From assembly GCA_977020255.1 (NCBI GenBank), contig CDROCS010000152.1, positions 310,001 through 374,000 of the forward strand: DNA of 64,000 bases. Direction: 5' to 3'. This stretch comes from Obrimoposthia wandeli. Its lineage: Eukaryota. The translations under genes and the position numbers were made by a program. Below are positions 31,838 through 54,206 of the stretch, in pieces; position 1 is the stretch's first letter; each line of letters starts with the position of its first letter. The notes beneath the pieces were generated by a model. It was not told the origin of the DNA. It worked only from the letters and a program-made list of their open reading frames with translations, and did no database searches.

Positions 31838-31978
31838 GCACAGATTACAAAGACGTAACCATGGACAACAACGCAGAGATCTCCTACTCATTTCCAGCAG
31901 AGATCCTCAAAAACACAAATCGATCTATCTCTCTTCAGTTCAAGACAAAGCAACGCGACACATTTCTGCTGTTCCTAG
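31838..31978 (+). CDS. Internal exon A of a laminin-G/LNS (neurexin-like) gene
   Basis: ttccag|GC ACA GAT...CTA G|gtgggg, 141 bp, phase 1/1, encoding TDYKDVTMDNNAEISYSFPAEILKNTNRSISLQFKTKQRDTFLLFL(G). This is a typical LNS start (ISLxFKTxQRxxLL). Confidence 0.8.
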
Positions 31979-34099
31979 GTGGGGCTAATTGAGCAGTTTT
32001 TTCTCTCTTTTTATGATTACAAAAGCTTAATTAACAAAATCAATAATGCCTCTATAACTATGACAATTTGGAAAGTAAAAACATAATTATGAGTGCTAGT
32101 GTTACATTTCACTTGAAAATGAGGGTCGAACTAGTTGGAAAAAGTTTCTTTTTCTAAATTAAATCAATGTGCAGTAAGTCAAAAATATTTCAGTATTTGT
32201 AAATTATTTTTCTTCTAACTACAGTCCAATTAATAAACTAAGACTTTGTTTGTCATGAAAATAAAATTATTTACGCAAAGGTTTGAATTGAAAAATATCA
32301 AGTTAAGTAAGTTTATACATTTGACATTAATATGTCATATTTAACAAAAAAATTGAACAATTCAAATATCTACATTAATTAGTGAGAAACATTTACCTAC
32401 ATGGAATGTTTGGAAAGATAAGTTTGATAATTTCATACTTAATAGTAAAATTATTTTTAGGATTATTGTGAGCTAATTATGCCACACAAAAAGTTGTATT
32501 TATCTATCGATAAAAGGCAAAAAAAATTGATGACTTTAAAAATTTAGGAAAGAATCAAGTCGTTATTGTTAGGAGTTAACAAATACTTCTGTCCTGATTG
32601 ACGTAAAGACGTAATTCGATATTTTAATGAACAGGCGTGGTTTAAAAGTAATGATTAGGTAGATATTTAATATCGAAAAAGATTGATCATAACGTTCTAA
32701 TTCAATCGAATAATTTCTGAAGTTTATCAAAATATACTCGAGGATTAATTAGTTGTGATATTATTTGAAGAATTCTCAGTGTGCCAATAAGCTAATGCAC
32801 TAAAGTTATTCGTCTCTACTTACCAGGGTATACACAACTATAATTACTTTATAAATACTTCATCAGTTTAATTTTAATTTTTTTTCATTTTTCAATATAA
32901 ATAAGTTTTATTTTTATTCTTTAGTTTATGGTTTTAAATATTTCTAAATAAGTAGAGGTTCCAATATTTTAAATATTACCAAAGGGTCTAGATATATGTA
33001 TACACTATTAGAAAATTTCCACGAAAACGTGTTTGCTTTGATTTGATCTTGTTCATTGTGTGATGTACAACCTCTAAGTTAATTTTTAATGAACGTTGGA
33101 GATGTGACTGGAGCTGTTCCAAGGTGTCATTTATATACAATTGCTTTCAGAATTCCTCAAAAGTCTTCAAAATGCTGCAAACTAGAATAAGCTGGTGGAA
33201 AGTTAAATTTAAAAGAACATTAAAATAATAAATACTTAAATAACTATCCTTAAAAAAATATAAGGCAAATAAATAACAATAGTTTAAGTTATACATAAAG
33301 TTTATACCAAAATACTTATTAAAATGTTATGTAGTGACCCACAATAAAGAATAATAGTTTTAAAATATTAATTAATTTAATGTAAAATTCACCTTTTTAC
33401 GAATAACTTTTTTAAAGAAAGACCTTAGTTCAAAATCTGAACTACACATAAATAAGTAATGAAATATCGAATTATTTCATGTATGCTCGAAAGTTTTTCA
33501 ACTTTCGTTTTAAGAAACATCCACAAAAGTGTCATTTTTGTTAATTAAAACGTTAATTAATAAAACTTTAAAGAATAATTTCTAGACATCTAAAAGTCAC
33601 ACATAAATGAACAAAACATCATTTTAAAGCATAAATTATTTCCAATTGAAAAAGGTACGGCTCATCAAGATCACATCTTTGGTGAAAAAAGTCCTACAGT
33701 ATAAGAAGTACATAAAACTTTGCAATACTAGCAGGCAGACACACCTACTAACGGGTTACCCGATGGAACCCAAGTAGACAATAAATCAAATAAAGTAAAC
33801 CCCATTTAGATTATCTAATCTGAATCAAAAGCCCCGACAGGAAGACCCGGGCACTACATATGGATTAAAAGAATATAAAACCAGGGTTTTTGGAAATTAG
33901 ACATAATAAAATTTACTGGACATCGTGACTGACCTCCAACGAATAATATTACAGGTCATATGTTTCTTTTTATGTTAACGTGTTAAAATTTTACAAAATT
34001 TAGAGAACTCTCACAATTGTTGGCACCCTGGTTATTTGTAATATATTGTTATTTTTATCAGTTTTGATGATCTTAATAAAGTAGTATATACAATTTTGA

Positions 34100-34811
34100 T
34101 TAATTTTTAATTTTAGCCCAACAGTTCCTTGGGCACAAAGTTGATGTCATGTAATTCACAAGATAATTTCGCAAAGTGAGCTGAACTAATAATTGCCATC
34201 TGAATGATGTTGATTTATGAAGAGAACCAAGCACTGCTTCAGATATTTCTCAATGTATACCTTTTTGCCAACAGCCAGAAAAGACTGTTGAAATTCCAAT
34301 TTTTGCCCAAACGAGCTTTTTTTCTCAAACTTGATAACCAAGCTGTACTTCTTATCAGGAGGTTCATCACCTCTTTCACGTTCGTAGTAGAAAGAATTGC
34401 CAGCTAATCTAGGATTTACCCTGATGACATCAGTAATTCTACATGCGAACAGCTCCCTGTGCAACGGATCAATTCACTTTTTTTATTTAGAAAGCTGCTT
34501 GACATTGGTGAGGGCAATCTTTGACATTTTTACCGAAAGGGATATTCTATCCTACAGTCCTTTTTTGAAACTCTTTTACTTCTATGGCTTTGAGATGTTT
34601 GACAATCTCAGACTTGACCTTGTGCATGTTGTGTTCACAAAACTTCGCAATCAAATTTCTTTTATGTTTCCCAGACCACTTATTCCTGATAAATATTGAC
34701 CTGAAACTAAATGTTATACTTAATTGAACTGATCTTACTGATTTGAAAAAACAAAAGTGAACAAAAAATACTCCTACTAAAAATATGTTTGATTTTTTCC
34801 CGATCACCCGT
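34100..34811 (-). mobile_element. maT/DD37D-like Tc1/mariner element, copy 1 (decayed)
   Basis: GNSFYY...KFEKK...YIEKYLKQCLVLFINQHHSDGNY and INFVPKE; terminal TA|ACGGGTG at 34811. Confidence 0.7.
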
Positions 34812-35439
34812 TAATGAAAATTCACAAATTATTTAGTTACTAATACTTGACGATTAAAATTGTCTATGATTTCTAAAACTAATCACGATGAAACTTTCGT
34901 TGGTTTAAAATTGTTTCCAAATTTAGGTGTAACAATATAAAATGTGAGTCTCATTTCACAATTGTAGAAAATAAATGGTAAAAATTTGTTTCATGGAATG
35001 TAACGTATTTTGTTTCGTGTTCAACAACAAAAGGGGGCTGTTGTTCTGCTGATTTTTTTTCCGGAAAACGTAGTTGACAAAATGAAGTGTGAAACAGCTG
35101 AGCATCAAATATGCACAGAAGTTCTCACAATATCTTGTAGAGCAGTAAGAAAAGGAAAAGAAGCAGAAATATTGTCATATTATGCTATTAAAAATGTATG
35201 GAGTTTAGAAATTTGAACGAAAATTATAATTTATCATTCATTATTTATTCGTTCTTTATTATTTCAATTATCAGGTTTTCGATTGGTTATTAGTATAAAT
35301 GATTTTAACTATTGGGTTATTTTAATTTTTGACTAAATTTTGTCATTTTAAATAACTACTGTCATTCAGAAAAGGACGCTGACATTCTTAGGGGAGACAG
35401 GTACGAAAACGGTTAAGGCTGATAAAAATAATATACATG

Positions 35440-35930
35440 CAGAAGAGCTATTTTCAAGAAACTGGAAATGGAAGACGATGGCAGCGTTAAAAAGAAATGT
35501 AAAATTGTCATAGAAGTAACTAAATTGTTCATGAAAGAACATCACCATGGAAAAATACATTAGATCAATATCATGCAGTAGAGAAATTAGTAAGTCATCG
35601 GTATATCGAACTTTGCAAGAAAATTAGTATAGATCTTACATGTCTACATAAGTGCAAGAGATATCTCCTTCCGATTATAAATTTCTAAATGAATTTGCCA
35701 ATTAAGCATTGAATGGATTATTCTTTTGTGCAATCTCATAGTCTGATGAAGTCCGCTTTAAGGTTCCAGTTTGTCTGCATCTAATCTCCATGTTGAAAGT
35801 CCTCTTCATCCAGAAAAACGTTTAACCTGTTACTGCTACATTAATCCTTTATCGAAGAAGGAACAATATCCTAGCAAGATGGAACTCCACCGAATATTAT
35901 AAAACATGCAACAACTTTTTAAAGAAATCT
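35440..35930 (+). mobile_element. Tc1/mariner transposase remnant
   Basis: SREISKSSVYRTLQEN, VQEISPSDY, SDEVRF, ESPLHPEK and *QDGTPP in the expected order. Confidence 0.7.
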
Positions 35931-36009
35931 TTCATATCTAATTGAAATGTTGGTCAACATTTTGTTATTTCCTGGCTTCGATGATCCCCAGATTTCACTC
36001 CTTTAGATT

Positions 36010-36260
36010 TAGATAGATAATTACGTCATCAGAGTGGGTAATATGTCTAAACGCGTTGTGGATACTCTAATTATATATTTGCCAACCACCAAATTAGTCA
36101 GATATGAAAGTCACTGTCGAGAAGTAAGCTGAAGCGGCAATCTGTTGAATGAGCTCGCTTCAAATATGACCTATCATGACGTCAATTAATCATCTGCTTA
36201 CTTAAAAGTGACTCGCGCTTAAGGATACTCATATCGATACATCTTGATTTCTATTGTCAG
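36010..36260 (-). mobile_element. Possible Gypsy reverse-transcriptase fragment
   Basis: ELIQQIAASAYFSTV (cf. ELVxKIAxxxYFSTxD) and SDDVIIY (cf. YLDDVII), with an internal deletion. Confidence 0.35.
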
Positions 36261-37578
36261 ATAGACAACTCCACAAACATCGATCCAACAAAAATGCTAA
36301 AGTGTTTCTAACTATATTACGGATATTTGAAAAAAGGAATTTAACCCATAAATTGTAAGCAATATAAAAAATAAAGTTGCAGAAAAAATCAAGTAACGTT
36401 TTATCTTATTAATTTTTGTCGTTAAAATTTGAAGCGTTTCTTTGTAGTCGGACATTGTTTATCAATTTTAAAATCTTTCTACCATTTCTGTAAATGAAAC
36501 AAATTCAGATAATAAAAATGTAAGTCTACAGCTATTGTTAGAAAGTAAAAAAAATACTTATCACATTACATAGAACGGAATTAAATTAGGATAAAAATAG
36601 CACTAAAAAACTTTCACTTTTCTTGTCGAAAGTGAGAATAAAAATGTCCAAGAATTGTTCCTTGTATGACACTTAATTTTGAAAAAACAAGCAACTGATT
36701 TGATTTCCTGTTTAGATTAGTTAAAAATAAATGCTTACATTTATCATGTCTAAAAATAAACTACAAGTATTTAAATATTTAAAATTATATTATTCAACAC
36801 AATAAGTGGGGAAAATCTCAAAATAAATATTTGTAATGAAGAATATATCATTCATTTTTAAATTTCTCAAAATAATTTTAAAAATGGTATCCATGAATCA
36901 TTTTCGTCATTATGTTTAAATAAAAGAGATTCCCATTTTTAAGCTGTGTATTGTTAATGTTAATCCATTTCATTGGTATATGATTCTGAAGTTTACCCAA
37001 AGAATCTTCAATTACGTCTTTTTGTTCCTAATCATGTTTTATATCATTACAATATTGCCAAAGTTGGTTATAAAACGTTGCTAAAAATAAACAAAACTGT
37101 TGAAGAAGACGCTGTTTTTCTGTAGATAATGATTTAAACTCTGCGGGGAAATATGAACGAAGTGTAATAATTTCTCTGTACAACTACCGAGCTTTGTTCA
37201 AAACAATAACTATTCTAATACATAACTGGTTCCCGCAATCCAAGAAAAATTTACTCAAGTAATCAAATTCGTTATGATATCCGGGCAAATGCACTTTATC
37301 TAAAATAATACTTCAATGAAAATATTACTAATTTTAAAAAATTTCTACTGTCAATATTATTTTGAAAGTCAAATCATTTTACTCCATCATACATTGACTG
37401 AAATTTATTCGCAATCCAGCCATCTAATGAATGATACTGATAGGGCACACTCCACCAATTCAGTTTTTTACTGAGTAATACTCCCATTCCATTTATTCCT
37501 CCAACCATGACTACATGTGTCACATGCTAATCCAATAATTTTATTTTTAATTCAATATAATCCATTTTTTGTTCAATA

Positions 37579-37736
37579 CAGTCAGACCTCTACATAACGA
37601 ACACTCTACATAACGTATTGTCTTATTGTAGTTTATTTTGTTTTATAAATAAAAGTTTATTAAATTGTTCGTTCCTTTTTTTAACGAACATGGAATTTTT
37701 TGAAAAGTTGGTGTTCGTTATGTAGAGGTCTGACTG
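37579..37736. mobile_element. 158-bp MITE with perfect 26-bp TIRs (pogo/Tigger-type)
   Basis: cagtcagacctctacataacgaacac (37579-37604) is the exact reverse complement of 37711-37736; TA at 37577-37578 and 37737-37738. Confidence 0.95.
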
Positions 37737-40259
37737 TATTTGGTATTATTTCATATTGAACCTCTCTCTTAATTCGAACTACACCGAAAATTACCTATAT
37801 ATTTTGATTTTTTTAATACACTTCATGATCTTCCGTCTATGTTCACTTCAGCTACTCGATAAGTACAAACTTACCATTATAATGCTTATTATAAGAAAAA
37901 GTGTTCAAATTTATCCTGAATCTCTTTATTCATTCTGTAATGGAATGTAATTTTGGAAAAATTTGCCAATCCACATTGATATTTACTAGGTATATTTACT
38001 TTTTTTGTAATTTAATGTAATCATCATTAGAATAATCATCTGTATTATTATAAATTACGCGTATTTTAGATTTATAAGAAATTGTAGACTTCTTATACAG
38101 ATTTGAATCCGGATGCAAAAGACAAGGTTTAAAAACGAACTTTCTCTTACCTCTTTTTCGTTTTTGATAATCCAATCATTCTTAAGTTATAACCATCGTT
38201 AAAATTTAAATAATTTTTGTCTTCCTCTAACATTTTACATTTGTCATGTTTAATTCCATAAAACATTTTGAACATACATAATTTACATTCTGCTATTAAT
38301 AAAGATGAATCATTTGAGTGATTGAGCGGTATTAATTCTTTTTTAAAGTTTCTTCTGATATTTCTATAAGCTTTTTAATTTTGACTTTTAAGTCTTTATT
38401 GTTATTTATTGACTCCAACTTTGCTACATAAATCTTGTAATTATATTCAAATATTATTAATAGCTTCTTCTTTCGACGAATGATTCCTCAACGATAAAAG
38501 TCTTTTAATAACCTCTAATAAGAATAGTATTTTATTTCCAAAATGAAATTCTAAAACGGTTCCATCTATTTGAATTTTTGTTGTTGATTAAATTCCCTTA
38601 TTTTAAAATAAGTAAAATAATACGTCATAAATATTTAGTTTTTTTCATACTTTAGTTATTATCATGCATGAAATAAGACTGGCAATATTTATAAAACATA
38701 AACCATTCATATCACGCCTGGAATCCGTAGATGGTAGGCTGAGAGTGATGTGACTGATCCATATATAGACACAAGAGTGCTAAAAGGTCAAAGTGGACAA
38801 GACATAAAAACATGAGAAAGAGTCTAAAAAAGAAAATTAAACATGTTGTACACGATAAATTTTTAAAGTAACATAGATAATATAAATATACACGCTCAAT
38901 GATTTTAGAGACCCATTTATAAATGACATTGAAGTAACCATTAAAAAATATATATAAAACATAATTATAAATAAATGATTTCCTTATTTTCTTTTTAGAC
39001 AAAATATTATAGCATGTTTTGTGTTTCAAATTCAAATATATTTATTTCTTTTTAAAAATTTTCTGAAAATTATTTCTTCGATTTTAACAAAAGGAACATG
39101 AAAAGAATCTATATTTAGTTTTTCCTTCAGAAATGTCTTTGAAATGAATAATGCAATTTTATATTTTTTCTGATTTTTGTGAAATTAATTGTTACTTTCT
39201 TATGATATATTTTAAAGAAATTATTAGAAATACTTTTACATTCATATTTATGTACTTTTGGATTTCGTATTTTTCTATTTGTTAAGAATATTATACTATT
39301 GCTTTTTTAAACTATGCGAATCTGAAGGTTGATTACATTTGAACGATTATATAAATAGTTATTTATTAATACAAATTTATGTAAATATGAATTTTATAAA
39401 ATAGTTTCCAAAATTGTAGCTCTTAACAATATTGGGATAAAACTGTTTTAAGCCCATACACACATTTTGTAGGAAGCTTGACAATTTTATACTTTAATGA
39501 ATTGAAATTTACGCATGTTAGAAATAATACAAATGTCAATTTTTATAAAAATACATATTTTGTTCTAAAGTATTAATAAAAATAGATATTTCAAAAATTA
39601 CATTGTCCACAAACTCAGGACTCAAATTTTTACTGACAACTTTTTGATGTGAAATCGGTCATATTAAAATTAATACAAAAAAATCATTTATCATATGAAT
39701 ATTATTTTATTAAATTTTATAAAGTTGACATATATTTAAAATATCTAATATACAAATGTAACTATTGTTAATCAAAAAAAAAGTATAATTTAAATATTTA
39801 TTTTAAACAAAAATTGAGATATAATTAAGCAAATAAACAAAGTTTTATTATAAATAAAATATATAATAAATTAGCAAACATTATTAAATTAAAATTAAAC
39901 TTTGAATATATTTTCATATAATAGTACGTCTGTAATCTAACCTATAAAAATAAATAAAAATCATTCTGAACTAAATAGTTTACTTTTCCTGATATTCATA
40001 CATAAATACAGTGTATTGTTCAAAACATGTAAACACCATCAGAAGCCATTTCTAAAATTATTGAAAGATGATTTATTGATTCAATTTAAGATTAGATTTA
40101 TAGACAATGTCTGATAGCTGATATAACAATATGTTTTCTTGATGTTTTCTTAAAAATTATTTTGACTTTTACTTCAGTTGTTATTAGAACTTAAAATTAA
40201 ACTCTATATTCAATAAAATATATTTTTTCGAACGTCACTTTATTTTATCTGCGTCACTA

Positions 40260-41000
40260 TATGCCTCTGCGCGTGTTGAAACCACGACTTGGAAACTTTA
40301 CTTTATTGTGGTAGTCGACGCAATTCGAATTTGTTGATATCTTCCGCTGATAAGTAATTAATTAGCGCGAGGTTAGAGATTTTTGATTCTGCGGCTGTTT
40401 ATCCAACTCTTGTTGCACTGTACAGCATTCCAATTCTTGTGGCAATCTGGAGCTGAGCAGCTTCAAGGAGTACATCTCCGATGTACTCGCTGAGTTTGTA
40501 CAGGTTCTCTGCCTCATATCTTTTGTCTTTTTCGGCGAGAATTTAAGTCTTTCCTGTTTGCTATCATCTTGCTACAGTTGTAATTTAACATTGGCATATC
40601 TTGGTTGTTCAGATAGTAACGGAGGAGTAAGGGCACGACTCTCTGCATGACGTTGAACGTCCATACCCCGTAGAAATTGTAGAATATTTCTCAGAGCGGG
40701 ATCAGGTGCTCTGCCATGTTTCTGCGTTCGTATGTTGACTTGCTACGCGTATAATATCCAGATTGCTCGTCTGGTTCCAGATTAAACGAGGGAGGTGGTT
40801 CTGAGCTATTACTGAGGTCTTGATCGTCGTTAATATCGTGCCAAGCAACTAGTGCTGAATTGTATTTGACTAAAAACTTGTTGTTTTCTAATAATTGAAC
40901 AACGGAACGATCGCCGTGTTTTGATTGAAAGTAGATTGTATCTTCTGTTTTGTCAATTTTGAGGGCTTCGCAAAATTCACAAGATTGTTGTAAAAAGAAT
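40260..41000 (-). pseudogene. Disrupted GC-richer reading frame, possibly retroelement gag-like
   Basis: About 100 stop-free codons (FFLQQSCEFCEALKID...MAEHLIPL*), then frameshifted segments such as PDPALRNILQFLRGMD and RYEAENLYKLSEYIGDVLLEAAQLQIATRIGMLYS. The family is uncertain. Confidence 0.3.
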
Positions 41001-41049
41001 TTAAACTTTCTCCTCTAAACCTAACAAAAACGAGACTGTCCTAATCTAG

Positions 41050-41439
41050 AAATCTATATAATAAAAATTTAGAAATTATATTTTATTTTAGGTAAAATAA
41101 AGGATAAAGTCTACTTTGGAACGGAATATCTCCTTAAGGTTTCTGTTATATCAAATGCAAATAGTTTTATTAGAATTGGCTAGTATGGGACAAGTGTTTC
41201 TGAGCATTATATGTTTTAAATGTGTTTATTTATAAAGATATTTATAAATCTATATAATGAAAATTAAGAAAATATATATTATTTTAGGTAAAATAAATGG
41301 TAAAGTTCACTTTGGAACGGAATATTTCCTTAAGGTTTCTGTTATATCAAATGCAAATAGTTTTATTAGAATTGGCTAGTATGGGACAAGTGTTTCTGAG
41401 CATTATATGTTTTAAATGTGTTTATTTATAAAGATATTT
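41050..41439. repeat. Near-identical tandem duplication, 194-bp units, 196-bp period
   Basis: 41050-41243 and 41246-41439 share long identical runs, for example aggtttctgttatatcaaatgcaaatagttttattagaattggctagtatgggacaagtgtttctgagc. Confidence 0.95.
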
Positions 41440-42069
41440 GTATATGTATATCTAGTTTATCTATATTATCATGTGGTTTTAATTTAGACTAATCCTTTTT
41501 TCCAGTGAAAACTCGATTCCTGCACAAACTATAAAAAGTGACATTTTATTACAACTAAACAAAACAAAGGTCAAAATAATAAACATAACATTTTTTTAAT
41601 CAAAAATTATCCATTCTTTTGGAAGTTAGAATTCTTTGGCTTTTAGCATTGTTAATATGGCTTTGTTAATAAATTATTTCCCCCTATTTAGATTTTTATT
41701 GATTAATGATATTGTCATTTTCCAGAATTTAATATCATCTCCCATTTCATTACACATTTCAAGAATATTCTGCATATTTTGTCGTTCCAATAATAATTAT
41801 ATCCTTCTGGCCTTTCCAAGCCAAATCTAGACAAATTAGTATTTTACAGTATGTTTAATAATTTCTGATCTATTTTTACTTTAAACATTTATATATTTTT
41901 AATTTCTTCTTATAAACGTTTCTTTCTAAATTATATTACTTATAATAAATTCAATATAATACTAATACTAATACTAATGAAATTTATAAATAATAATACT
42001 AAGAATATATTTTTTGGACAATTTAAACTAAAACAAAACTTCAGAAAAGTAATTTAAGAAATATTTAAA

Positions 42070-42340
42070 TCCTACTACGGTTCTTTCACATAGAATGTGG
42101 CCAATTGTTTTCTAACATCAGCGAATTTGATATGTGCAGAAGAAAAATTCTCATTTTGAAGTTACTCCAACCTTTCTCAAACACTTCCGTTCCTAAATAT
42201 TTAAAGATGTTCTCGATAAGTCTAACTTCTGGAAAATCTTTAAGATGATTTCTTTTGGTACGAAGGCGATGTTATAGTTTTAAAAAAAGTTTTTTATTGA
42301 AATTGCGTAGTGAAAGCAGGCTTTATCAGGTCAGAAAATG
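42070..42340 (-). mobile_element. maT/DD37D-like transposase C-terminal fragment
   Basis: PDKACFHYA, NIAFVPKE and FPEVRLIENIFKYLGTEVFEKGW (cf. WPDxASxHYA...PxxRPIE...VYxxGW). Confidence 0.65.
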
Positions 42341-43188
42341 AATAAGCTAGATTGATGATGTGAGTTGAGTAATTAAAAGAGTCTATTTTGCTAATTTACA
42401 CTTAGTTTTAAACATGATGAGCCATAAATTCTGTTACATAATAAAAAATCTTATAACTCTACAAATATTCATTATTTCAATTTGAAATTTGAACACAATA
42501 TAACTAATAAAACAGGAAAAATCAGGTATACAGTTTTATTCAAAATGGCTCCCTTTAGTCTTGACCACAGATATAAATAGGTGCAAAACATGTGGAGACC
42601 TCTCTCTGAAATGGCTGCCAAGAACTATTACTGATGCTGTTTTTGATTTCGTTGGCATTTTCCAGAAGCTGAAGGAATAGATTTCCGACTAGTGAAAAGA
42701 CTCTAATAAAAACCTTTCAGCCGTAAACATTATCTTAGCCTCTTTTTGATTGTGGCAGCTGAAAGAAGATATATCTTCAATATTTTATACGGAAACATCT
42801 TTACTCAATTACTCAATGTCCTTGACGTTAATAATATTATCAGATACTGGTCAGATAATATGGCTTAGTAGGTTTAATCTGATGTTCAAATATACATTTT
42901 ACAATAATAATTGAAGGGTTAATTTTAATTTAAAATTATGTAACATACACCCTGTAGATCTTGTAGAGTTGTGCAATGCGTATACGCAGTTCTTACTGTT
43001 TGATGTCCAAACTCTAATTGAAAACTGACACCCATCAAAATCAAACATAATAACTATTATCAGTACATCAGTTACATACAGCCACGCAATAAAACTGTCT
43101 GGATTTCTAGTTGCCACCTGTTATGTCCTATAGTTTGACTATTTTCAAGCCGAAACTAACGCAAACTAACAGTCACGCACGTACACAG

Positions 43189-43427: not shown

Positions 43428-44819
43428 GTGCGCCAGGGCCGGCACTTCTGGTGCAGTAAAATTCAGAGTCAAAAAGTCCATATGTATTTCCAGTCATTCT
43501 TTAAATTATGGTCAATTTCACTGCCACACATCATGCATAAAACCTGTATATAATATTTTCAAAAATTGATCTCAATTAAGTGACAACACTTGAACTTTTG
43601 CATGTTAATGGAGAAATTGAAAAAGCCACCATAACGACCGTCATCATTATTTTATAAACTTATCTCGTATAATTTTTTTAAATTGGAAATTCATAGTTGC
43701 AATCTTAAATTTATAAATCTTAAAGGGCGTTCAGTCCCATTTCTAACAATATAAATCTCTTTGCATAATTTAGTTAAATAAATGTACTTTAAAAGGAAAT
43801 TGGAAGATACATAACTGCACGTTTTTCATAGAAAAGCACAAAATCAATAACTGTCACATAAAATATTAAAATAACAAAGCTAATAAAAAAAATTAAAAAT
43901 TTTATATAACTTAAAAAATTATTATTTTTAAATTTATTTAAATTTTGTTTCTTTTAGAAGGTGGGACCTGTCCATTAATCATTTTGACCATTTACTGTTG
44001 GAGTCAAGAAAAACATTATTCCTGATGATTTAAGTTTGGTTTATTAGTTTATTAGTTTCTGACCGAAAAACGTTTTGGCCATTGGAATTTGAGTGCACTT
44101 TAAATGGAAAAGTAAGGTTGTTACAATTAAATTTAAGGCTTTTGAAACTATAAATATGAAATCAGAAAAATCGTGAAATTTACAAGAAGCAATGGAAAAA
44201 TATAATCCCAGAAAGCGGAAGATTTGTATTTGACTCAAAATGAAATGTATGAACTTGGCCAATATAGTCGAAAAAGGGATTGGATGTTAGATCTATAGTG
44301 TTATAGTGTTAGGGTTCTAAATAAGGTATAAAAGAAACGTCTTTGTTGAAAAACGTTCAAACAAAATAGTTGGCAACTAATACTTGAAATTAAAATGTCT
44401 TGAAATGTCAAATTCAGAAAAGTAAATAAAATATAGTTTGTTATATCTAAAATATTCAATATTCGAAAGATTTGAAGACTTTAAAAATACTAATTAATAT
44501 TAATTAAATTTTATCTAAATATACAATTTTCTAAATAACTTTACGAAAAACAGATATATAGTAAATTTGATAATACTCAATGATGCCAGATAAAATATCA
44601 GATCAATACATATATCACGAGTCGAAAATGAATATAATAATAAAAAGTTATTTTAAAAAGATTCAGTTTATTAATTAAATCATAGATTAATTAACTTTCA
44701 TAATCGAATAACTTTTGTCAGGAACATTTGATAAAAATAACAAAACATCAAATTTATTCTCTAAAATTACCGAGTCGATGAAGACCGATTTTTGAGTGAA
44801 ACATATTTGAGTACAAATG

Positions 44820-45110
44820 GCTTATATTAGAGGATGCTATTAAAGTGAGAAATGGCATGATAAAATCAGACAAATTTCGGCATTTGGAGTACAATGACCA
44901 CAAGCTAGTAGAGTCGCATGTTGTAAAGAGTCCATGTTCTCAGTAAGTTCACCGTGGAATTGCAAAAAAATTAGGGTTACCAAATCCTAAATCTTTCACC
45001 GAATTTGATATGAGAAGATATGTTGCCAATGTTTTGGCTGAGCTGGTGCATCGACTGATATGACGGAGAAACACTTCAACTGGAAATCGGGAAAACTTCC
45101 AACACGACAA
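44820..45110 (+). mobile_element. Crypton-like tyrosine recombinase remnant
   Basis: GIAKKLGLPNPKSFTEFDMRRYVANVLAE and, after a frameshift, AGASTDMTEKHFNWKS match the pattern IAxxLGLPNPxxYTGHxxRRxxAxxLAxAGA...HxxWKS. Confidence 0.7.
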
Positions 45111-48100
45111 CAAAAAACAAAACTGTAAAAATTGAAAAAATTAGATTCAATAAATAATAAATACTTAGTGTATTTTTTTTAAATTCTGCTTGCATGGCGA
45201 TTTTTTTGTGTGTATAAAACGTAGACTTTCATTCAGCTCCGAGTCAAGTGTACGAAGAATCAATTACATTTATTCATGATGCACCGAAACGCAATATTAC
45301 CAATGGCTTCTTGAGTAAACCCACTTTTGTGATTTATAGGGGCGTGGAGTTCTCCAGGGCTAGCCTTTGTTCAAATATGAAGACAAAACAATATCGTAAT
45401 GAGAATTCAAAATTTCATATTATCCCACCAATGGCCTAATTTCAATTTCAAATAAAAAATTGCAAATGGCCATTTTCTGACAGTTGTTTCTTGAACACAG
45501 AAAGGTTGTTAACGTTTACTAATTCGACACATTTATCTAAACAGAAAGAAGAGAATACGAAAAATACCACAAGTTCTTAGAAACACACACATTGTTGTTA
45601 ATGTATTCAATTTTTAATTTAAATTTTCATTAATTAAGCATACTCAGAATGTGCTCAGGTAAATAAATATTTTCAAGGTCGAAAAATTGGGCTGTCAGTG
45701 GAAAATTGCACAGAGCAGAACATTCATTATTGAAGAGGACAATTTCCATGAGATATCTTGAGTGAGATTTCCAACAGACCGTGAAAGATGATATCAGTGA
45801 TGATTATTACGATGTCGTGGTGGTGGTGCTTGGAAAAACGCATCTTTGAGTGGATCAATGTCTTATTGTCGAGAAGAAGCGATTATTTAAAGGATTCATG
45901 AGAGGGAAATATTCAGTCTATGGGAGATAAGAAATAAGCGGTGTATATTGAATTATTTCTTTCATCACTATAAGCCCTTCAACACTTCTGCATCTCGAAA
46001 GTGTGCCTAATGATTTCGTTAAACGGAAGGGAATTTCATTTTGTTTACAAGTTGATGCTGTAGCTCATGGTATATGCTGAAACGTACTTTAAAAACGAGA
46101 GTTGTAGAACAAAGGGTTTCCTAAATTATCTGCTATATTCAAGTTCTATTCTTTCGGTTGTTGTTTACTCACTGTACCAAAATTCAGTTTCATTGTCGAT
46201 GTACAATGACATTATTTGGAATTGATTTGTAGATATACAAACCATCAATAGTTCATGGAATATAGAATGTGCAACAAAAAATTATTTGTCGTAATATTTT
46301 CTGATTAGTAAAGTATTCAGCTACTTTCTGAATTTTTACAACATCATTACGATTGTTATATTCAGCGGTATATTGTTGTAATGATTCAGATATTACATTT
46401 TAAATATTCCATCACTATGTTTGTTATTTGAGAATGTTTGACCAATTTGCTGTCACATTGTAACAGGCTAGAGAAGATCGTTTATAATAGGCAGATTCTT
46501 GAATTAGATTCTGATTTTGACCAGCAGTCAATGGAGCTTTAAAAAGCGTTCACTGGTACTAGCACTTTTTTTAATTTGAATATAATTTTGACAGTTTTGT
46601 TGGTATCAAATTATTTGAAAAGCTGGAATAATAAACAGTATGGCATTTTCTTATAATTTTATCTTTTTGATATTACTTTTCTATGTTCTTAAATCTTTAT
46701 TGATTTGACAATTCATTGTAATGATTTTATCAAGAACTCAAAGGATCAATATTGAGTTTTTTCATCGATTCTTAAGTTCTAACTATAATATAAATTGAGA
46801 ATCTACATAGAAGAAGTTATTTAAAATTAGCACTATCTATGAATATTATAACAAATACATTTTGTATAATTTTAATTACAGTATAATATTCTATGTCAAA
46901 AGATTTCTGTTTTATAAATTATGCTTTTTAACAAATTTATACAAAAATGATCTACTATCAGTGTAGCAATAGATTAATAAATAAAAGTGTTAACTTCGTT
47001 TCTATGTAATAAAGCGCCAATTTCTTAATATTTGAAAGACATATTATTCAAAGACTCTTTACAAATCAGCGACCTTGAGTAGTTAACTGGAGCATTTTTG
47101 AAAGCGTCTTCTCACATCTTCCATATTAATACCTTTTCTTGATGCTATTGACAAACTATTGAAAAGCATGTATGCATACACTTGGATACTTGAATGTAAT
47201 AAGAATAAGAAAAATAAACTTAATAGAAAATTTAACTGTATAATTTGTTGAATTGCATAATAAATCAAGTGAACAAAATGATCAAAAAATCAGACAACCC
47301 TTTTAAATAAAAGCTATTTAGGAAACAGGAAATTAGAAAATCAATAGATTCTCGATAAATTCTAGAGTGACAAATCTCAAGAAGAAACCCCAGTCCATAC
47401 AAATGAGACAGATTGGTTTCGTATCGTCCTGAGGTGATGTAATGAAACCAGAAAACAGATATTCGAATCGAAACGTTATATCAAATAACACCAAATTAAA
47501 TATTAGTAAAATTTGTATAAAAACAAACAGAAATTGTTAAATTGTAAAAAATTAAAGTAGAAGAAGCAACCATATTATATTTATATTTGCTTGTATAGTT
47601 GATCATTTCGATGTAATAAATTGAACTTATCGGTCGTTTACAAATTTGTTTACACAACATTCAGCCTGGTGGCAGTTTAATATATGAGTTAAAAGTATAA
47701 GTTTCTTTGAATCAAAATGTCAAAGGTTTGGAAGAAATAAAACAAATAACCTATCACAAAAAAGCTAGCGACTGAAGCAAAATATTTTGGAGGACCCCTA
47801 AATACCTGCTGTGAACCTCCAATTTCCTAATTTCTTATGTGGAAACCCAAGAATTTTCTATGGACCTTCATGGTCCACGACACGTTTGTTTATTCTTCTG
47901 TTTGTATAAAAGGGATTTTATATGAGCATGCTGTTAGTTATGGAGTACACAGTAGATGCGTAATTTTAATATGATTGATTCTGCACTTTGACATCGATTT
48001 GTTTTGCAAGACTGCTCAATCGAGCTTAATTTACCCCGTTGGGTGACAATTCCTTTTCAAGAATATGTAGCCGATCTAGATGTATGTTTTCAGGTATACA

Positions 48101-48479
48101 ATGAAAGACCAGAGTAGAAATGATATGTAGTTACACGATAATTTAGTTTTTGTGGATGAAGTTGCATTTTCTTTAGTTGGAACTCAACATTGCCTCTTTT
48201 AGAGCTAAATCCTCTCGAATTTCGCTACTTGTCAAAAACTCTTTGCACTAAATATTTTATATAAAATAAATATATCGGGAAATTATAAATAGTAAAATAA
48301 ATATATTGATACTATTAAGTTTTAAAAATAAGTTAACTTTATATTGAAATTTAAAACATAAACATGGAAATTACCATAAAATATTCGTTTTTATGGGTCA
48401 TGTTTAATTTTTTTTCCTGCACTGTTGAGATCCCTGAACTGTTTAATAACATGCAAGAACAATCGCATTTCCAAATTTG

Positions 48480-49290
48480 ACGGATAATAATATTTTAAGA
48501 TCTTTTAATATTAACGATACTTTGACAAAAACCGGGGATATTTAGTCGGTGCTATCTTTCTGCGTTTAGCCATCTATAACTAAAGCAAATTTGCTTGTAA
48601 TATCATTTGATCTTTTCCCCTCAACATATTTTGTTAGGAGTACCTTCTTCAAGGGGTTTACCGATAAGGACCCAGAACTGAATATTTTCCAATCACAAAA
48701 GTGAAAAGGAACAAAGTTTGGGTATAGATGTTACTGAAAACAACAGAAAGGTTGATCTTTTATGGTATGTATGTCGATTGTTTAGGCGTCCAATCCATTC
48801 CTTATTTTAGTCAACGGTCAATTTTGCAACATGACCATGCAACAATTCCCAGATCGAATATTACTAAGGCTGTCCATTGCCTCCATATAGCCCAGATTTG
48901 AAATTAAAATTATGAAAGATGCGATTTTTGGAGTGTGATTTTCCAACAAAGGAAGAGTCTTTTAATTCTTAATTATAATCAAAGGAATTTTTTGACATAT
49001 TTACTGGTTTATTAAACACATTAAGGTAAATGTTAACATCGTTTCCTTGTGAATTAAATATTATTTACCTATAAAATCAATATCTGTAAATTTGAAAAAT
49101 ATAGACAAACTGGCATTTTTAGAATCGATCGACACTTCGTCACACAAAAATAGTGAAAAGGGCTTTCCAGATAAAATGTTGAGAACTACTATTTGAAACA
49201 GTTTATAAACGACGCCCAAAGATAAATTATGTAATAAAATAAATGGCATACAAACTCTCTTAAACATTACTTTTGTACAGAATTTCAAAT
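48480..49290 (-). mobile_element. Possible second piggyBac transposase remnant
   Basis: CDEVSID (cf. xVSIDE) and FSVTSIPKL (cf. FFTSIPL); very decayed. Confidence 0.3.
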
Positions 49291-49599
49291 TGTTTGCAAA
49301 ATTTTGAAAATTTGTTTAAATAATCACTCAATTCAATTCATTCAGTTGTCTTTGACCTTATACTGTCAATGGCTTATAAGAATTTGATTCACGATTTCGT
49401 TGATAATTAATTTATATAAATCAATAAATAATTAATACAATGAATTTAGTTTACTTTATCCATCCCTCAAAACAACAGGATACGCCAACGATCACAAATC
49501 ATTTATTCGGTCTTTTATTATGTCTAAAAGTAAAATATGTCTTTGAAAATTGAGAATTTTGACAGATTCCTCTTTACTGCGCCAGTGAAAAGCATATTA

Positions 49600-50420
49600 A
49601 AAGACGATTAACATAATCAAAATGGGTATATGTGTGTCTACGAATGAGAGTGAGAGTGACGGGGGAGGGTGGACGACCGCAGCTAATTTGTTAATGGTTG
49701 ACCTCGTCGGAACTCTGATGGATGAGTACAGCAGCATCTGAGAATGGCCGGATGATTCGATTTTGGCGCGAGTTTCTCGACGTAATTCATCAAAGTTTAA
49801 TGAGGCATCAGAGTATAGTTTAGTTTCAGAATACACAACAATATTGGCATTACTGGCAATTGCTGCTCCATATGTCTATTTCCGCTGCTAGCTACTGCAG
49901 ACTGTATCACACGAATATTTTGTGGCCTTAAGATATTGTATTATTGGATATCACTGGAGACCTTGTATGGCATTGACACATGACAATAATATGCACCTCC
50001 TATTCGCGTATAGTGTTATATTTACATGTCTAACTTGTTTGCATTTTAGTCAACGTTCTTACATAGTGATAATTCGTATTTAGTAACGTTTTATCATGCA
50101 CCTTCAAATTTGAATATATCCAAACTGTATTCAACTGATTGACCTTCATTTTGAATGCAGGTCTTCAACCGAGCATGAAAAGAGAACGTTTCATTTAAGC
50201 AAATATGTGTCTATAATTGAGCACCCTAGCTCAATAAATGTATTTTAACGTACCAATTGAGTCGAAGCGTGCTTCCCAGTTACTTCTAAACATTCGCTTT
50301 ACCAGCTACCCCGAAGACATGTTTGGATATCAGAACCGCTTCAACCATCTACTAGAGTTTCTGCTGCGAACATTAAGGTCACTATCAGTTTTAAGCATAT
50401 TGCAACATAAATATACAGTG
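49600..50420 (-). mobile_element. Possible LINE reverse-transcriptase remnant
   Basis: LMFAAET (cf. LLFADDT) followed by TFIELGCSI (cf. FxYLGSxI) and LNFDELRRETRAK. Confidence 0.3.
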
Positions 50421-51169
50421 TGATGCAAAAGCAAATTTCCATATACATGTATACTATAATTTCCATTCAATTAGTTTTAAAATCGTATAGAAATATAATA
50501 ATATTAACTAATAGGTTTATTATCTTTAATAATACAGCAAAATAAGATATATACAAGTACATATAGAAAACAAGAATTTAGACTGATGCACACATTTAAA
50601 AAAACAAACTATAAATCAATAAATTTATTAAATAGGAATTAAATGTATTTTTTCATACATGCCTATGCAATCATGTTATTATCGAAATTAGTTAAAATAA
50701 TTATTTGATAATTAATTGAAATAAAAAAATCGATAGTGGTGAATAATATTACTTATTCACTCCCTATTAGCCGATAATGAACCGACAATTTATTGCTCCA
50801 TCTACTGAGTTGGAAGAAAAGTGAACTAGTGGTAATTGTTCCAATATATTGTAATTATTAATAATGATATGAAAGTTTAAATATTATAATGTTTTGCTGT
50901 GAGAAATATTCTTTACTTTTCCTTCAAAGATTGTTGAATTTTTGTAATATATGTGTCAAACAGAATAATTATATATTATCATACTTCAGTTGACAATTTT
51001 TTTTTTCATTGAAACAAGAAGGATTTTCCAATAAAAAAAATCCAGAATTCCTCGAAGTGAAGACCATCTAAGCCGAGTGCAACTGATATTCTCCGAGAAA
51101 CTGGATTATTTGATATTGTCTTATAGTGAACAAAAATGTGCTTATATGATAAAGTCACCAAAATAACAT

Positions 51170-51590
51170 CCAGTTTCTCAAAAATTCACAATATATTGAT
51201 CGATGGAAAAGTGTTTGTTTTTCTGGGAAAACGGTTATTTCATTGAGTCTAAATAGAAGAATTATATTAGAAGCCTTAAACAAATATCTTAATTGTACTA
51301 TGCAAAAGAGGATAGATTTTCTTAAGAGGTGTAATTTTGACTAGTGGAAAAATATTTTAAATCGCATTTAAAGCAATATAAACAGGTAATCATACATAGA
51401 AACCTTATCTGGTGTTATTGATGAAATTTGAGCAATTGGAACATTTCAACAAGATCCAGCCCCATCTAAAGTTTGTAGAGAAACAATGGGATTTTTCTAC
51501 CCGAGTCGTAGCCTGAACCATGACCCCAGTATCGCCAGTTGTAAATTCAATCGAGAATATATGGTTTATTCAAAAAAAGAAAATATCTAA
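51170..51590 (+). mobile_element. Tc1-like transposase remnant
   Basis: WKSVCFSGKT, FQQDPAPSKVCRETMGFF and SPVVNSIENIW occur in DDE order. Confidence 0.7.
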
Positions 51591-54032
51591 TGAAAGATAT
51601 GAAACTGTTTCAGAGTTATAAATAATTGCTTTTCAGTGTTTTAGTGTTTGTCTATCTATGAATAACACTATGAAAGAAGGTACTAAAGCTCGAGAATTTG
51701 GGTTTTTATAAGTTTATTTGTATTTTACAAGTCTTAATTTTTCATTGAAAAATTGAAAAATTGCCAACAAATTATTGTACCATCATATTTAGATTTTTAT
51801 TAATAAAATCATTGAAACCGTAAAAATATTACACGGATTTTGGACAATGGTTATAAAATTTAAATTAACATATTAAAAAGTCATCATTCAGTTTAATAAA
51901 ATATGTTGAATGGAAACTTATCGATGTCCTCCACTGTGACTTTGTTGGATGTTTCTTTATAAAATATTTTACAATTTTCTTTCATTTATAATTAATTCAT
52001 TCTCAAACATTTACTTAACCAAGCTATTTTTAAACGTACAGCTTCTTTCAGTGACATTTTAAAGAATTAAGTACGAGTGGATTTTGAATATCAGGTTTAG
52101 ATGATTTAGTACTTTGTGTAATGAATATGGTTGTTAGTTTTGACAAGTATTTTTGTATTTGGGATATTTCCCCCAGTTCTTAATTGTTGTTCTGTTTATT
52201 TGTAAAACCACAGTCAGATTTGAGTCAAGTACACATCCAATCTATTTTACAATGTTAAAAATTCAATTAACTGTTCGCCGACTTCGATACCTGATCTAAT
52301 GGCCTTAAGGTTGTCGTTTAAAATATATCTATATAAATTACATATTTTAAACCATCAGAACTGCAAATGTCGTCGATGAATCTTAAAACCGTCGTATCTC
52401 CATTAAATTAATAAAATAGCAGTACTTTATAAGTTTTTAAATATTTTTGTAACGAACTATAGCTAAAAATAATTTAATAACGGGAGAGTACAAATAACTT
52501 ATAATATATTGATGCTTTATTAATTTAAGGGAGATATGAAGATTTTTGGAATCAATGCGATAGGTTATAAGAATTTGGTTAGAAAATTTAAATCTATGTA
52601 TTTTACGGGAGTAAAATAAGAAACAAAGTAACCATTAAGTTTAAGAATATTTCTATATAGTCGAATGTAAACTGTAATTGTTTAAATAGTCGATGAACTT
52701 TTATGGAGAACCAATAATGTTTTGCTGGGGACTTTTGTATTCATCGAACTTGAAGAGGATGCAATTCGGAATAGTATACCAAGTTAAAATAATTAAATTG
52801 CTTTAAGAATGCCAAGAAAGATTCTTTGTAATAATTTAAGAAATCACTTCTATCAACTATGAGGCTCCAAAATCGAATATTTGATCAGAAAAGATTGGTT
52901 ACATTGATATTCGGGAGACGGAAAAGTCAACCGGATATTGTAACTTTATTGACTGGGCATTGGGAAACTGCTAAAATAAATGATGATGAGTGACATACTG
53001 GCCAGTCTTTGCATTGTACAGAGAAAATCGTTATGTTTTGTTGTTGTATTTGATCTTAATTTCGATCCATTTTTTCCATAAATAATTTAAATTTAGATTA
53101 AAAAATATTTTAGTTGACAAGGTCAGCATTGAAACACCTAATGTGCCTAATACATCGCAAAAAACCCAACAAAAAAATCACTGTTCCATATTTACTAGCC
53201 ATTGTTTTTTATCATATTTTTTATTCTTAGAAAGCAAACTAATAATATCGTTTAATCATATGTTTTTTAAGATGTTTCCATTTTCGTAAAATTTGCTGAT
53301 ATTTGGTTATGCAAAAAAGTAACCATTATTAATAGTTTTAACTAAATTCCAATTAACATCATCAATAAATATATGTAGAATAGATCTTTTTCTGCAACCA
53401 CAGACCAAAAAAATCAAGTAATATAGTTTTCATGTAATCAAACTGATAAGTTATCGATACAAAAATACTGTAATTTAATCAATTTTTTCAATTTTGTCTC
53501 AGATTTAGCAGTTCTGAATGGTAAAATTGATATCTTATAAATATTCACCTTTATTTAAAGTTGAGGATTTCACTAGTCAGTGGAGATTATTCTCTGGTAA
53601 ACATTGTAGTTAATAAATTACAATACCATTGTTTACTAAAATCCAATGATATTAGGATATTATGGGATACATGTATTTTATTTTTAATACGGCGATAGCA
53701 GAAAAAGTGTTTTCAATCATAATTGGCATGATGTCAGCTAAATCTGTTAAACAGAGCTTGGAACAAGTTCTGCATTTATTTGGAGGATAATAATACTGAG
53801 GATAATTTGTCGGCAGAATTTGCACAAAACGAAAAGAAATAGTGCGAGTTCTAACTAAAATTTTACTCAATGCTCAATACTTTCTAACGTCGACATGTAA
53901 AGGACTTTTTTCACTTACATTAACTAAAATTTGAATCCAAAAAAATTGAAAATATGTCTTTTAAAAGAAGCAAGTTTGCAATGTTGTACGACACTCCAGT
54001 TTCTACTTCTTAACTAACTCTTTTTGATTCAG

Positions 54033-54206
54033 ATCCTTGTACAGTTGGACAAAAAGACGATATATTTCTACAGCCTCAGCTTCAAGTTTGAGACGAAGAA
54101 TCTATTTCTGCGTTTGGCAAAACTCCCTACAGATATCGTTCCCCGTGACAAGATCTACCATGGATCACTGAAGATGCTCCCGACTTTCAGAGGCTGCCTA
54201 CAGAAT
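54033..54206 (+). CDS. Internal exon C of the laminin-G/LNS (neurexin-like) gene
   Basis: CTAAC branch motif and pyrimidine tract, ttcag|ATC...AAT|gtaagt, 174 bp, phase 0/0. Encodes ILVQLDKKTIYF...LFLRLAKLP...PTFRGCLQN, with the LNS C-terminal FxGCL motif. Confidence 0.9.

What the first reader, a model, noticed from the sequence alone, without database searches (positions are those of the whole stretch)
31838..54206. Hidden neurexin-like LNS domain spliced across two introns of about 11 kb filled with transposon debris
Seen in sequence: three GC3-rich islands with GT-AG ends and matching phases. A ends in G and B starts with GT, giving GGT (Gly); B/C is phase 0. The spliced product reads ...ISLQFKTKQRDTFLLFLG-PASSGSEKLQEFLSVYLEAGQLKIV...DNRWHSLSITQMANQ-ILVQLD...FRGCLQN, a complete LNS domain. 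The ORF track shows only out-of-context pieces, and exon A in the wrong frame. Recalled knowledge: vertebrate neurexin LNS2 has [27 protein letters not shown] and FMGCLKE|, with phase-0 introns at those same two positions. Inference: a divergent neurexin-family (or related LNS) gene that kept ancient intron positions while its introns expanded through transposon insertion.
Basis: partly seen in the sequence, partly recalled or inferred. Interest (0 to 1): 0.8.

Follow-up and report, generated by a model that had tools for sequence, protein, structure and literature searches.

The report
Spliced LNS2 exons of a neurexin gene
The three small coding islands are real, expressed exons that splice across two ~11-kb introns to encode the second LNS domain of a giant (>228 kb) alpha-neurexin-type synaptic adhesion gene of an unidentified AT-rich invertebrate; this is a correct reading of an ordinary, well-known kind of gene.

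Summary
Exons A (31838-31978), B (43189-43427) and C (54033-54206) have AG/GT borders and compatible phases, and they join into one open frame.

A 1784-nt contig of run X3 (same sample) joins A to B and B to C at exactly the predicted bases. It has no intron flanks. The DNA-like runs X1 and X2 cover the introns and do not hold the joined form.

The joined peptide, together with the first 34 residues of a fourth exon 20 kb downstream and outside the window, scores 36 bits against a laminin-G profile built from this genome's other LNS exons. The best of 2000 shuffles scored 11 bits.

That fourth exon and five further exons on the same strand match neurexin-1-alpha in strict order: end of LNS2, LNS3, EGF2, LNS4, LNS5, EGF3, LNS6. 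A transmembrane segment with a DEGSY motif follows. The window therefore holds LNS2 of an alpha-neurexin-family gene.

- The domain is not complete in three exons.
- The introns hold several high-copy interspersed repeats, but I found no recognisable transposase remnants.
- Shared intron positions between invertebrate and human neurexins, including splice site 2, were already described for the honeybee.

A second, diverged paralogue lies on contig C806. Verdict: a new member of a known kind, of low to moderate interest.

The parts
31838..31978 (+). Exon A: start of LNS2, from TDYKD to FKTKQRDTFLLFL plus the first base of a Gly codon. It needs one base from an upstream exon that was not found.
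   Evidence: AG/GT borders and an open frame. Its last 32 bases are joined to exon B in the X3 contig. It aligns to own-genome LamG profile positions 26-85 together with the start of exon B.
31979..43188 (+). Intron 1: 11,210 nt, phase 1, GC 0.28.
   Evidence: Absent from the X3 contig and covered by the DNA-like runs. It holds dispersed repeat copies.
33201..34126 (.). Copy of an interspersed repeat family. Other copies in the genome are 82-91% identical.
   Evidence: 30 or more copies on other contigs match query positions 1223-2148.
39612..41522 (.). Two adjoining segments of a younger interspersed repeat: 39612-40200 (copies 95-96% identical) and 40263-41522 (copies 90-93% identical). It contains a 196-nt tandem duplication at 41044-41435.
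   Evidence: On contigs C1053, C968 and C3642 the two segments lie about 3 kb apart.
43189..43427 (+). Exon B: middle of LNS2, from PASSGSE to CADNRWHSLSITQMANQ. It carries a stretch about 20 residues longer than in neurexin-1 and two Cys that are kept in the paralogue.
   Evidence: Pfam Laminin_G_2, E 0.054, profile positions 16-64. The X3 contig covers exactly 43187-43427. The paralogous exon on C806 has the same intron phases at both ends, with the donor two codons later.
43428..54032 (+). Intron 2: 10,605 nt, phase 0, GC 0.29. On the protein it lies where vertebrate neurexins have splice site 2.
   Evidence: Absent from the X3 contig. The protein position follows. It holds a repeat copy.
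44300..44886 (.). Copy of an older interspersed repeat family. Other copies in the genome are 77-83% identical, and some are tandem on C6458.
   Evidence: 39 scored copies out of 5825 first-look candidates.
54033..54206 (+). Exon C: from ILVQLDKK to FRGCLQN, the later strands of LNS2. It ends in phase 0.
   Evidence: AG/GT borders. Its first 30 bases follow exon B in the X3 contig. The alignment to single-exon LamG domains runs through it into exon D.

Best explanation
Exons A, B and C are three consecutive coding exons of an expressed alpha-neurexin-family gene on the + strand of contig C152. That gene spans at least C152:341838-570679, about 229 kb.

The three exons are spliced with canonical GT-AG introns of 11.2 and 10.6 kb. 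Together with the first 34 codons of the next exon (C152:384458-385322) they encode LNS2, a laminin-G/neurexin/SHBG beta-sandwich.

The rest of the gene encodes LNS3, EGF2, LNS4, LNS5, EGF3 and LNS6. A single transmembrane helix and a DEGSY juxtamembrane motif follow.

Shown here: exon borders, phases, both splice junctions in a transcript-like contig, laminin-G similarity of the joined peptide, and collinearity with neurexin-1-alpha.

Inferred by homology: the protein is a presynaptic or cell-surface adhesion receptor whose LNS2 binds extracellular ligands.
For: - Borders and the open joined frame.
- Splicing: one X3 contig of 1784 nt, depth 22, covers only 43187-43427. It continues on one side into the end of exon A and on the other into the start of exon C. 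X1 and X2 cover the introns and do not show the joined form.
- Contig length: its 1402 nt beyond exon B equal C + D + two LNS4 exons + 30 nt.
- LNS identity:
  - Pfam hit on exon B and on the paralogous exon.
  - The joined 218-aa peptide scores 36.1 bits against the own-genome LamG profile. Shuffles gave mean -0.2, SD 1.5, maximum 11.0.
  - phmmer alignments to single-exon LamG domains cross both junctions.
- Neurexin identity, as best matches to 3qcw chain positions:
  - 386-655, E 2.6e-34
  - 651-725
  - 871-939
  - 1023-1054, with the shared motif CDCSMTSF
  - 1131-1165
- Transmembrane segment plus DEGSY.
- Nearest Atlas clusters are named neurexin.
- In the whole 1.35-Gb assembly, exon B has one other match. 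It lies in a second neurexin-like gene on C806 and has the same intron phases.
Against: - Exons A and C alone hit nothing in Pfam or the PDB. Exon B alone is below Pfam's threshold.
- phmmer of exon B against 1.84 billion proteins found only two low-complexity false hits.
- LNS1, EGF1, a signal peptide and the C-terminal PDZ-binding end were not found in the 92 kb upstream or the 3 kb downstream that I could read.
- Run X3 is not on record as RNA. Its nature is inferred from its behaviour.
- Only 30 letters on each side of exon B were shown, so the rest of the contig was not read.
Confidence: 0.9

Rival explanations
1. The exons belong to a multi-LNS protein of another family (Caspr/neurexin-IV, agrin, perlecan, laminin alpha, Crumbs, pikachurin) and not to an alpha-neurexin.
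For: LNS domains are shared by all these families. Laminin, agrin and pikachurin appear as weaker hits. LNS1 and EGF1 were not found.
Against: - Every exon's best PDB hit is neurexin-1-alpha, at the collinear position.
- One exon carries the LNS4 end and the LNS5 start with nothing between them, as in neurexin. No fibrinogen-like or discoidin domain was seen.
- The EGF3 motif CDCSMTSF is identical to neurexin-1.
- The nearest Atlas clusters are neurexins.
Confidence: 0.05
2. The joined form in X3 is a processed DNA copy (retrocopy) or an assembly chimera, not an mRNA, so expression is unproven.
For: X3's library type is not on record.
Against: - X3 has depth only on the exon and none on the flanks. 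X1 and X2 cover everything and lack the joined form.
- X3 holds only 49 Mb of contigs for a 1.35-Gb genome, yet it holds every sampled word of exon D.
Confidence: 0.04
3. The locus is a decaying pseudogene whose exons only look intact.
For: No upstream start exon was found. The sequence is strongly diverged from vertebrate neurexin.
Against: All eleven exons inspected are open and have canonical splice sites. A spliced contig of depth 22 exists.
Confidence: 0.02

Closest known systems
Vertebrate neurexin-1-alpha (PDB 3QCW, 3R05, 3POY)
   Same: - The order LNS2, LNS3, EGF2, LNS4, LNS5, EGF3, LNS6 is the same.
- LNS2 motifs correspond: FKT.QR, DN.WH......Q, and F.GCL.. followed by ..Y.N..V.L.
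- The transmembrane segment is followed by DEGSY.
- The gene is very long, with large introns.
- The B|C intron falls at the protein position of splice site 2, just after the residue that aligns with the Q of NLRQ.
   Different: - Identity is only about 30% in LNS3, and LNS2 is too diverged for single exons to be recognised.
- The exon B stretch before DNRWH is about 20 residues longer and carries a Cys pair.
- LNS1 and EGF1 were not located.
- Nothing is known here about alternative promoters or splice inserts.
Honeybee neurexin I (Biswas et al. 2008, PMC2570956)
   Same: - It is an invertebrate alpha-neurexin gene of 400 kb with 28 exons.
- 12 of its 26 intron sites are shared with human NRXN1-3.
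[quoted passage not shown]

This is the same picture of ancient intron positions inside a greatly expanded gene.
   Different: The bee has one neurexin I gene. This genome has two diverged alpha-neurexin-like genes (C152 and C806). Bee-human identity is 30-33% overall, and this gene seems at least as diverged.
Paralogous gene on contig C806 of the same assembly
   Same: - The exon B homologue at C806:760434-760649 has the same phase-1 acceptor (G|GC, Gly), a phase-0 donor, the Cys pair and CADN.WH.
- Its LNS5 exon is 50% identical and also best matches neurexin-1-alpha LNS5.
   Different: - Exon B is only 34% identical.
- The paralogue's insertion is shorter.
- Its donor lies two codons later.

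Membership tests
LNS / laminin-G domain (Pfam PF02210, PF00054) | Match to the family profile above its curated threshold | tested here: inconclusive
   Exon B alone scores 14.4 bits (threshold 22.9), E 0.054, on profile positions 16-64. The paralogous exon scores 16.1 bits. Exons A and C alone give no hit. The joined peptide could not be given to the Pfam tool because it has no reference.
LNS / laminin-G domain (Pfam PF02210, PF00054) | The whole joined domain is significantly similar to bona fide LamG domains, in order along the fold | tested here: met
   The joined peptide scores 36.1 bits against a profile of 13 LamG exons of this genome. The best of 2000 shuffles scored 11.0. After its own four exons, the top hits among 2855 decoy open frames are LamG exons, at E 1.5e-5, 2.4e-4 and 7.9e-4.
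Alpha-neurexin | Three LNS-EGF-LNS cassettes in the order LNS1-EGF1-LNS2-LNS3-EGF2-LNS4-LNS5-EGF3-LNS6 | tested here: inconclusive
   LNS2 through LNS6, with EGF2 and EGF3, were found in the right order on one strand. LNS1 and EGF1 were not found in the 92 kb upstream.
Alpha-neurexin | Each domain is closer to the corresponding neurexin domain than to other LNS proteins | tested here: met
   The best PDB hit of every exon tested is neurexin-1-alpha, at collinear chain positions 386-655, 651-725, 871-939, 1023-1054 and 1131-1165. The nearest Atlas clusters are neurexin fragments, score 0.95-0.98. No tree was built because no reference sequences could be fetched.
Alpha-neurexin | Single transmembrane helix followed by a conserved juxtamembrane motif, and a C-terminal PDZ-binding end | tested here: inconclusive
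   A transmembrane helix followed by YRCSTKDEGSYR lies at C152:570416-570679, with a weak Syndecan-profile hit at E 0.0021. No C-terminal exon was found in the 3.3 kb that I could read downstream.
Alpha-neurexin | Ancient intron positions shared with vertebrate NRXN genes, including splice site 2 in LNS2 | not testable with these tools
   On the protein, B|C falls after the residue aligned with the Q of NLRQ, and C|D falls after the residue aligned with the E of FMGCLKE. Vertebrate exon maps were not available. PMC2570956 states that human site 2 coincides with a bee exon junction. PMC6856630 numbers the SS2 insert from residue 379 and says it extends strand beta-9 of LNS2.

The most novel reading that the evidence does not exclude
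This invertebrate lineage has two anciently duplicated alpha-neurexin genes. Both keep the intron at the splice-site-2 position. Both carry a lineage-specific Cys-pair loop in LNS2.

The transcript contig starts 2 nt before exon A, which is the splice-site-1 position between EGF1 and LNS2. It stops 30 nt past an exon end inside LNS4. These ends might mark vertebrate-like alternative splicing in an animal outside the vertebrates.
Probability: 0.12. Interest if true: 0.5.

Novelty: new member of a known kind. Interest (0 to 1): 0.25.

Why it matters
The result adds a correctly spliced and apparently expressed alpha-neurexin gene to an unannotated invertebrate assembly. It shows that this animal has two diverged copies, whereas flies, worms and bees have one.

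It gives one more data point for something already published: neurexin intron positions, including the one at splice site 2, are ancient and survive massive intron expansion.

For the scan it has a practical use. Run X3 behaves like a transcriptome of this organism, so other predicted splicing events in this genome can be tested against it.

It does not reveal a new kind of gene or mechanism.

Tried and rejected
- phmmer of exon B against 1.84 billion representative proteins gave only two hits. Both are low-complexity, unrelated proteins: a MAG 'hypothetical protein' and an ENA protein. They are false positives.
- The search for homologous proteins found nothing with the 292-aa LNS3-EGF2 exon or with the USP ORF. 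The word prefilter and the length window do not suit such diverged exon pieces. As a result no reference neurexin sequences could be obtained and no phylogeny was built.
- PDB searches with exons A, B and C alone gave no neurexin hit. A two-sequence profile of exon B and its paralogue gave neurexin-1-alpha as top hit only at E 0.12, with the best stretch at [16 protein letters not shown] of LNS2.
- Pfam on eleven intron ORFs found no transposase or reverse transcriptase. Self-comparison within 324 kb of C152 covered only about 8% of each intron.
- Searches for LNS1, EGF1 and a C-terminal exon gave nothing convincing. The one weak hit, at C152:304102, is a simple repeat.
- Organism identification failed. 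The sequencing runs are coded. Earlier notes say only 'unidentified invertebrate'.
- Folding the joined peptide, or scanning it with Pfam, was left out.
Full report
**1. Observation**

The window is G000:C152:310001-374000, + strand, in a 1.35-Gb assembly of 6912 contigs. It is AT-rich throughout, with GC mostly 0.25-0.35.

- Exon A, 31838-31978: ttccAG| ... |GTgggg.
- Exon B, 43189-43427: acacAG| ... |GTgcgc.
- Exon C, 54033-54206: attcAG| ... |GTaagt.

Exon A ends with a single G, which the first two bases of exon B complete to GGT (Gly).

Third-position GC is 0.54, 0.73 and 0.59 in A, B and C. The two introns (11,210 and 10,605 nt) have GC 0.28 and 0.29.

**2. Direct evidence of splicing**

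No run is on record as RNA. Four runs of one sample hold the exons, and they behave differently.
- X1 and X2 cover window:42800-43800 continuously.
- X3 has only 49 Mb of contigs. Its single contig here (1784 nt, depth 22.4) aligns only to 43187-43427.

The 30 letters of that contig before 43187 are unique in the window and equal 31947-31976. The two letters AG that follow are shared by the end of exon A and the end of intron 1. The 30 letters behind 43427 equal 54033-54062, the start of exon C.

The contig therefore joins 31978 to 43189 and 43427 to 54033, exactly as predicted. The joined form is absent from X1 and X2.

A six-frame search of the whole assembly finds exon B only at this locus and, at 34% identity, in a paralogue. 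No retrocopy has been assembled. X3 is most simply a cDNA library, but this is an inference.

The contig runs 1402 nt past exon B. That equals exon C (174) + the next exon (865) + two LNS4 exons (224 + 109) + 30 nt. This fits the gene model given below, but those parts of the contig were not shown to me.

**3. Is it an LNS domain?**

Taken singly, the exons are barely recognisable.
- Exon B gives Laminin_G_2 at 14.4 bits, E 0.054, on profile positions 16-64.
- Exons A and C give nothing in Pfam or the PDB.
- Exon B finds nothing real among 1.84 billion proteins.

I then joined A + B + C and the first 34 codons of the next exon in a script. I compared the resulting 218-residue peptide with what could be fetched.
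- Among 2855 open frames from 324 kb of C152 plus other LamG loci, the best non-self hits are all LamG exons. They are the paralogous exon on C806 (E 1.5e-5), a single-exon LamG on C1456 (2.4e-4), and this gene's own LNS4 exon (7.9e-4).
- Those alignments run without a break across the B|C junction. For the C1456 domain they also cross the C|D junction...ADGMWHSVKLALDVNQIIITADN...FQGCLRNIILN against ...ADNRWHSLSITQMANQ|ILVQLDK...FRGCLQN|IYLN.
- Against a profile built from 13 animal-type LamG exons of this genome, the joined peptide scores 36.1 bits. Two thousand shuffles gave mean -0.2, SD 1.5 and maximum 11.0.

The domain is an LNS domain. However, it needs four exons, not three, and the fourth lies outside the window.

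**4. Which gene?**

The next exon is C152:384458-385322. It has an atttcAG| acceptor in phase 0 and a G|GTgagt donor.

It matches neurexin-1-alpha (3QCW) at chain 386-655 with E 2.6e-34. The match covers the last strands of LNS2 (KNNDVRLELSRL...VVAFKCEN), then LNS3, then EGF2.

Further exons on the same strand follow in strict order:

| C152 position | Match in 3QCW | Domain |
|---|---|---|
| 398356-398579 | 651-725 | EGF2 end / LNS4 start |
| 403760-403868 | (no PDB search; Laminin_G_2 profile 47-75) | LNS4 core |
| open frame 426688-427191 | (no PDB search) | LNS4 end and LNS5 start, with nothing between |
| 438405-438731 | 871-939 | LNS5 |
| 464640-465122 | 1023-1054 | EGF3, with FRGCIAS and the shared motif CDCSMTSF |
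| 509783-510016 | 1131-1165 | LNS6 |
| 570416-570679 | (Syndecan profile, E 0.0021) | transmembrane helix, then YRCSTKDEGSYR |

All the ends I inspected have canonical splice sites. The nearest ESM Atlas clusters of the LNS3-EGF2 exon are named neurexin-3a, neurexin-2 and neurexin-1.

The gene is thus an alpha-neurexin-type gene of at least 229 kb, and the window carries its LNS2. I did not find LNS1, EGF1 or a signal-peptide exon within 92 kb upstream. I did not find the C-terminal end either.

**5. Intron positions**

- ...[25 protein letters not shown]...
- ...[24 protein letters not shown]
- ...[16 protein letters not shown]

Exon B ends at the residue aligned with the Q of NLRQ. Exon C ends at the residue aligned with the E of FMGCLKE, since residue 6 of the exon D open frame aligns with chain residue 386.

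Splice site 2 of vertebrate neurexins inserts HSGIGHAM(VNKLHCS) in LNS2 (PMC2150755). The insert starts at residue 379 of mouse Nrxn1 and extends strand beta-9 (PMC6856630). That it sits directly after NLRQ is my recollection, not something I tested.

For the honeybee gene (400 kb, 28 exons), Biswas et al. report the following (PMC2570956):
- 12 of 26 intron sites are shared with human NRXN1-3.

It is also already described for another invertebrate. I could not inspect vertebrate exon tables.

**6. Paralogue**

Exon B's only other match in the assembly is C806:760449-760634, + strand. It lies 44 kb upstream of a series of LamG exons on that strand.

The full exon (C806:760434-760649) resembles exon B in several ways:
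- a phase-1 acceptor that also completes a Gly codon (G|GC);
- a phase-0 donor, two codons later;
- the conserved YL..GQL, the Cys pair and CADN.WH.

It hits Laminin_G_2 on the same profile positions. The LNS5 exon of the C806 gene is 50% identical to the C152 one and also best matches neurexin-1-alpha LNS5.

This animal therefore has two diverged alpha-neurexin-like genes. The conservation of exon B between them supports that it is a real coding exon.

**7. Intron content**

Genome-wide DNA searches gave 5,800-9,000 first-look candidates per intron. Of these only about 40 each were scored.

The clear dispersed families are:
- window 33201-34126, copies 82-91% identical;
- window 39612-40200 (95-96%) and 40263-41522 (90-93%), apparently two parts of one longer element, with an internal 196-nt tandem duplication;
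- window 44300-44886, copies 77-83% identical.

These cover at least 25% of intron 1 and 5.5% of intron 2. Both figures are lower bounds.

Eleven intron ORFs have no transposase or reverse-transcriptase domain. 'Transposon debris' is therefore partly confirmed, as non-coding interspersed repeats.

**8. Verdict**

The observation and the interpretation hold. What is there is an ordinary, if very long and diverged, metazoan gene. It looked 'hidden' only because a bacterial-style ORF list cannot show spliced genes. It is a new member of a known kind, of low to moderate interest.

Three leads deserve a look if RNA data become accessible:
- the two-copy state;
- the Cys-pair insertion in LNS2, shared by both copies;
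- the transcript contig's ends at or near exon boundaries that correspond to vertebrate splice-site regions.

Noticed in passing
runs X1-X4: Run X3 has 49 Mb of contigs and no recorded library type, and it behaves like a transcriptome of this organism. It holds the exons without their intron flanks, and it holds a spliced contig. Earlier follow-ups on this genome stated that no RNA data exist, so X3 could be used to test their splicing predictions.
   Followed up: partly
window 19031-20101 (-): An intronless 356-aa ORF has a full ubiquitin C-terminal hydrolase (UCH/USP) domain, Pfam E 2.3e-35. A word-based homologue search found nothing at E <= 1e-10. It lies 11.7 kb upstream of exon A on the opposite strand. 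Whether it sits inside the neurexin gene depends on where the upstream exons are.
   Followed up: partly
window 29706-30017 (+): An ORF fragment carries the C-terminal part of a DDE_Tnp_4 (Harbinger/PIF-type) transposase domain, E 4.7e-10. It lies just upstream of exon A.
   Followed up: no
G000:C806:760434-914299 (+); L048, L029: A second alpha-neurexin-like gene. It has an exon B homologue with the same intron phases, and LamG exons at 804892, 826252, 840783, 876163 and 914096. Its LNS5 exon is 50% identical to the C152 copy.
   Followed up: partly
window 43260-43400 (exon B) and L048:1486-1701: In both paralogues the LNS2 stretch before the DN.WH strand is longer than in neurexin-1 and carries two conserved Cys (C-x7/8-C). 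This may be a lineage-specific disulfide loop.
   Followed up: no
X3 contig ends: 2 nt before window 31838, and 30 nt past C152:403868: The transcript contig begins almost exactly at the exon A acceptor, which is the vertebrate splice-site-1 position between EGF1 and LNS2. It ends 30 nt after an exon end inside LNS4. Such ends can mark branch points from alternative splicing, or simply drops in coverage.
   Followed up: no
G000 contigs C506, C253, C372, C665, C336, C493, C3952, C5118 and others: The assembly holds many bacterial contigs. Dozens carry intact bacterial-type COX1 genes. Several carry uninterrupted open frames of 1400-2700 aa around Laminin_G_3-like 'IDEVRIWN' domains. C506 is 3.78 Mb. 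The 1.35 Gb is a host-plus-microbes assembly.
   Followed up: partly
G000 contigs C109, C652, C736, C2590, C2533, C3456, C5570, C626 and others: At least eight near-equal full-length COX1 copies each have 4 in-frame TGA codons (mitochondrial code). Many broken ones sit on large contigs. These are mitochondrial haplotypes or nuclear mitochondrial insertions.
   Followed up: no
window 41044-41435: A 196-nt unit is duplicated in tandem at 94% identity, inside the young interspersed repeat of intron 1.
   Followed up: no
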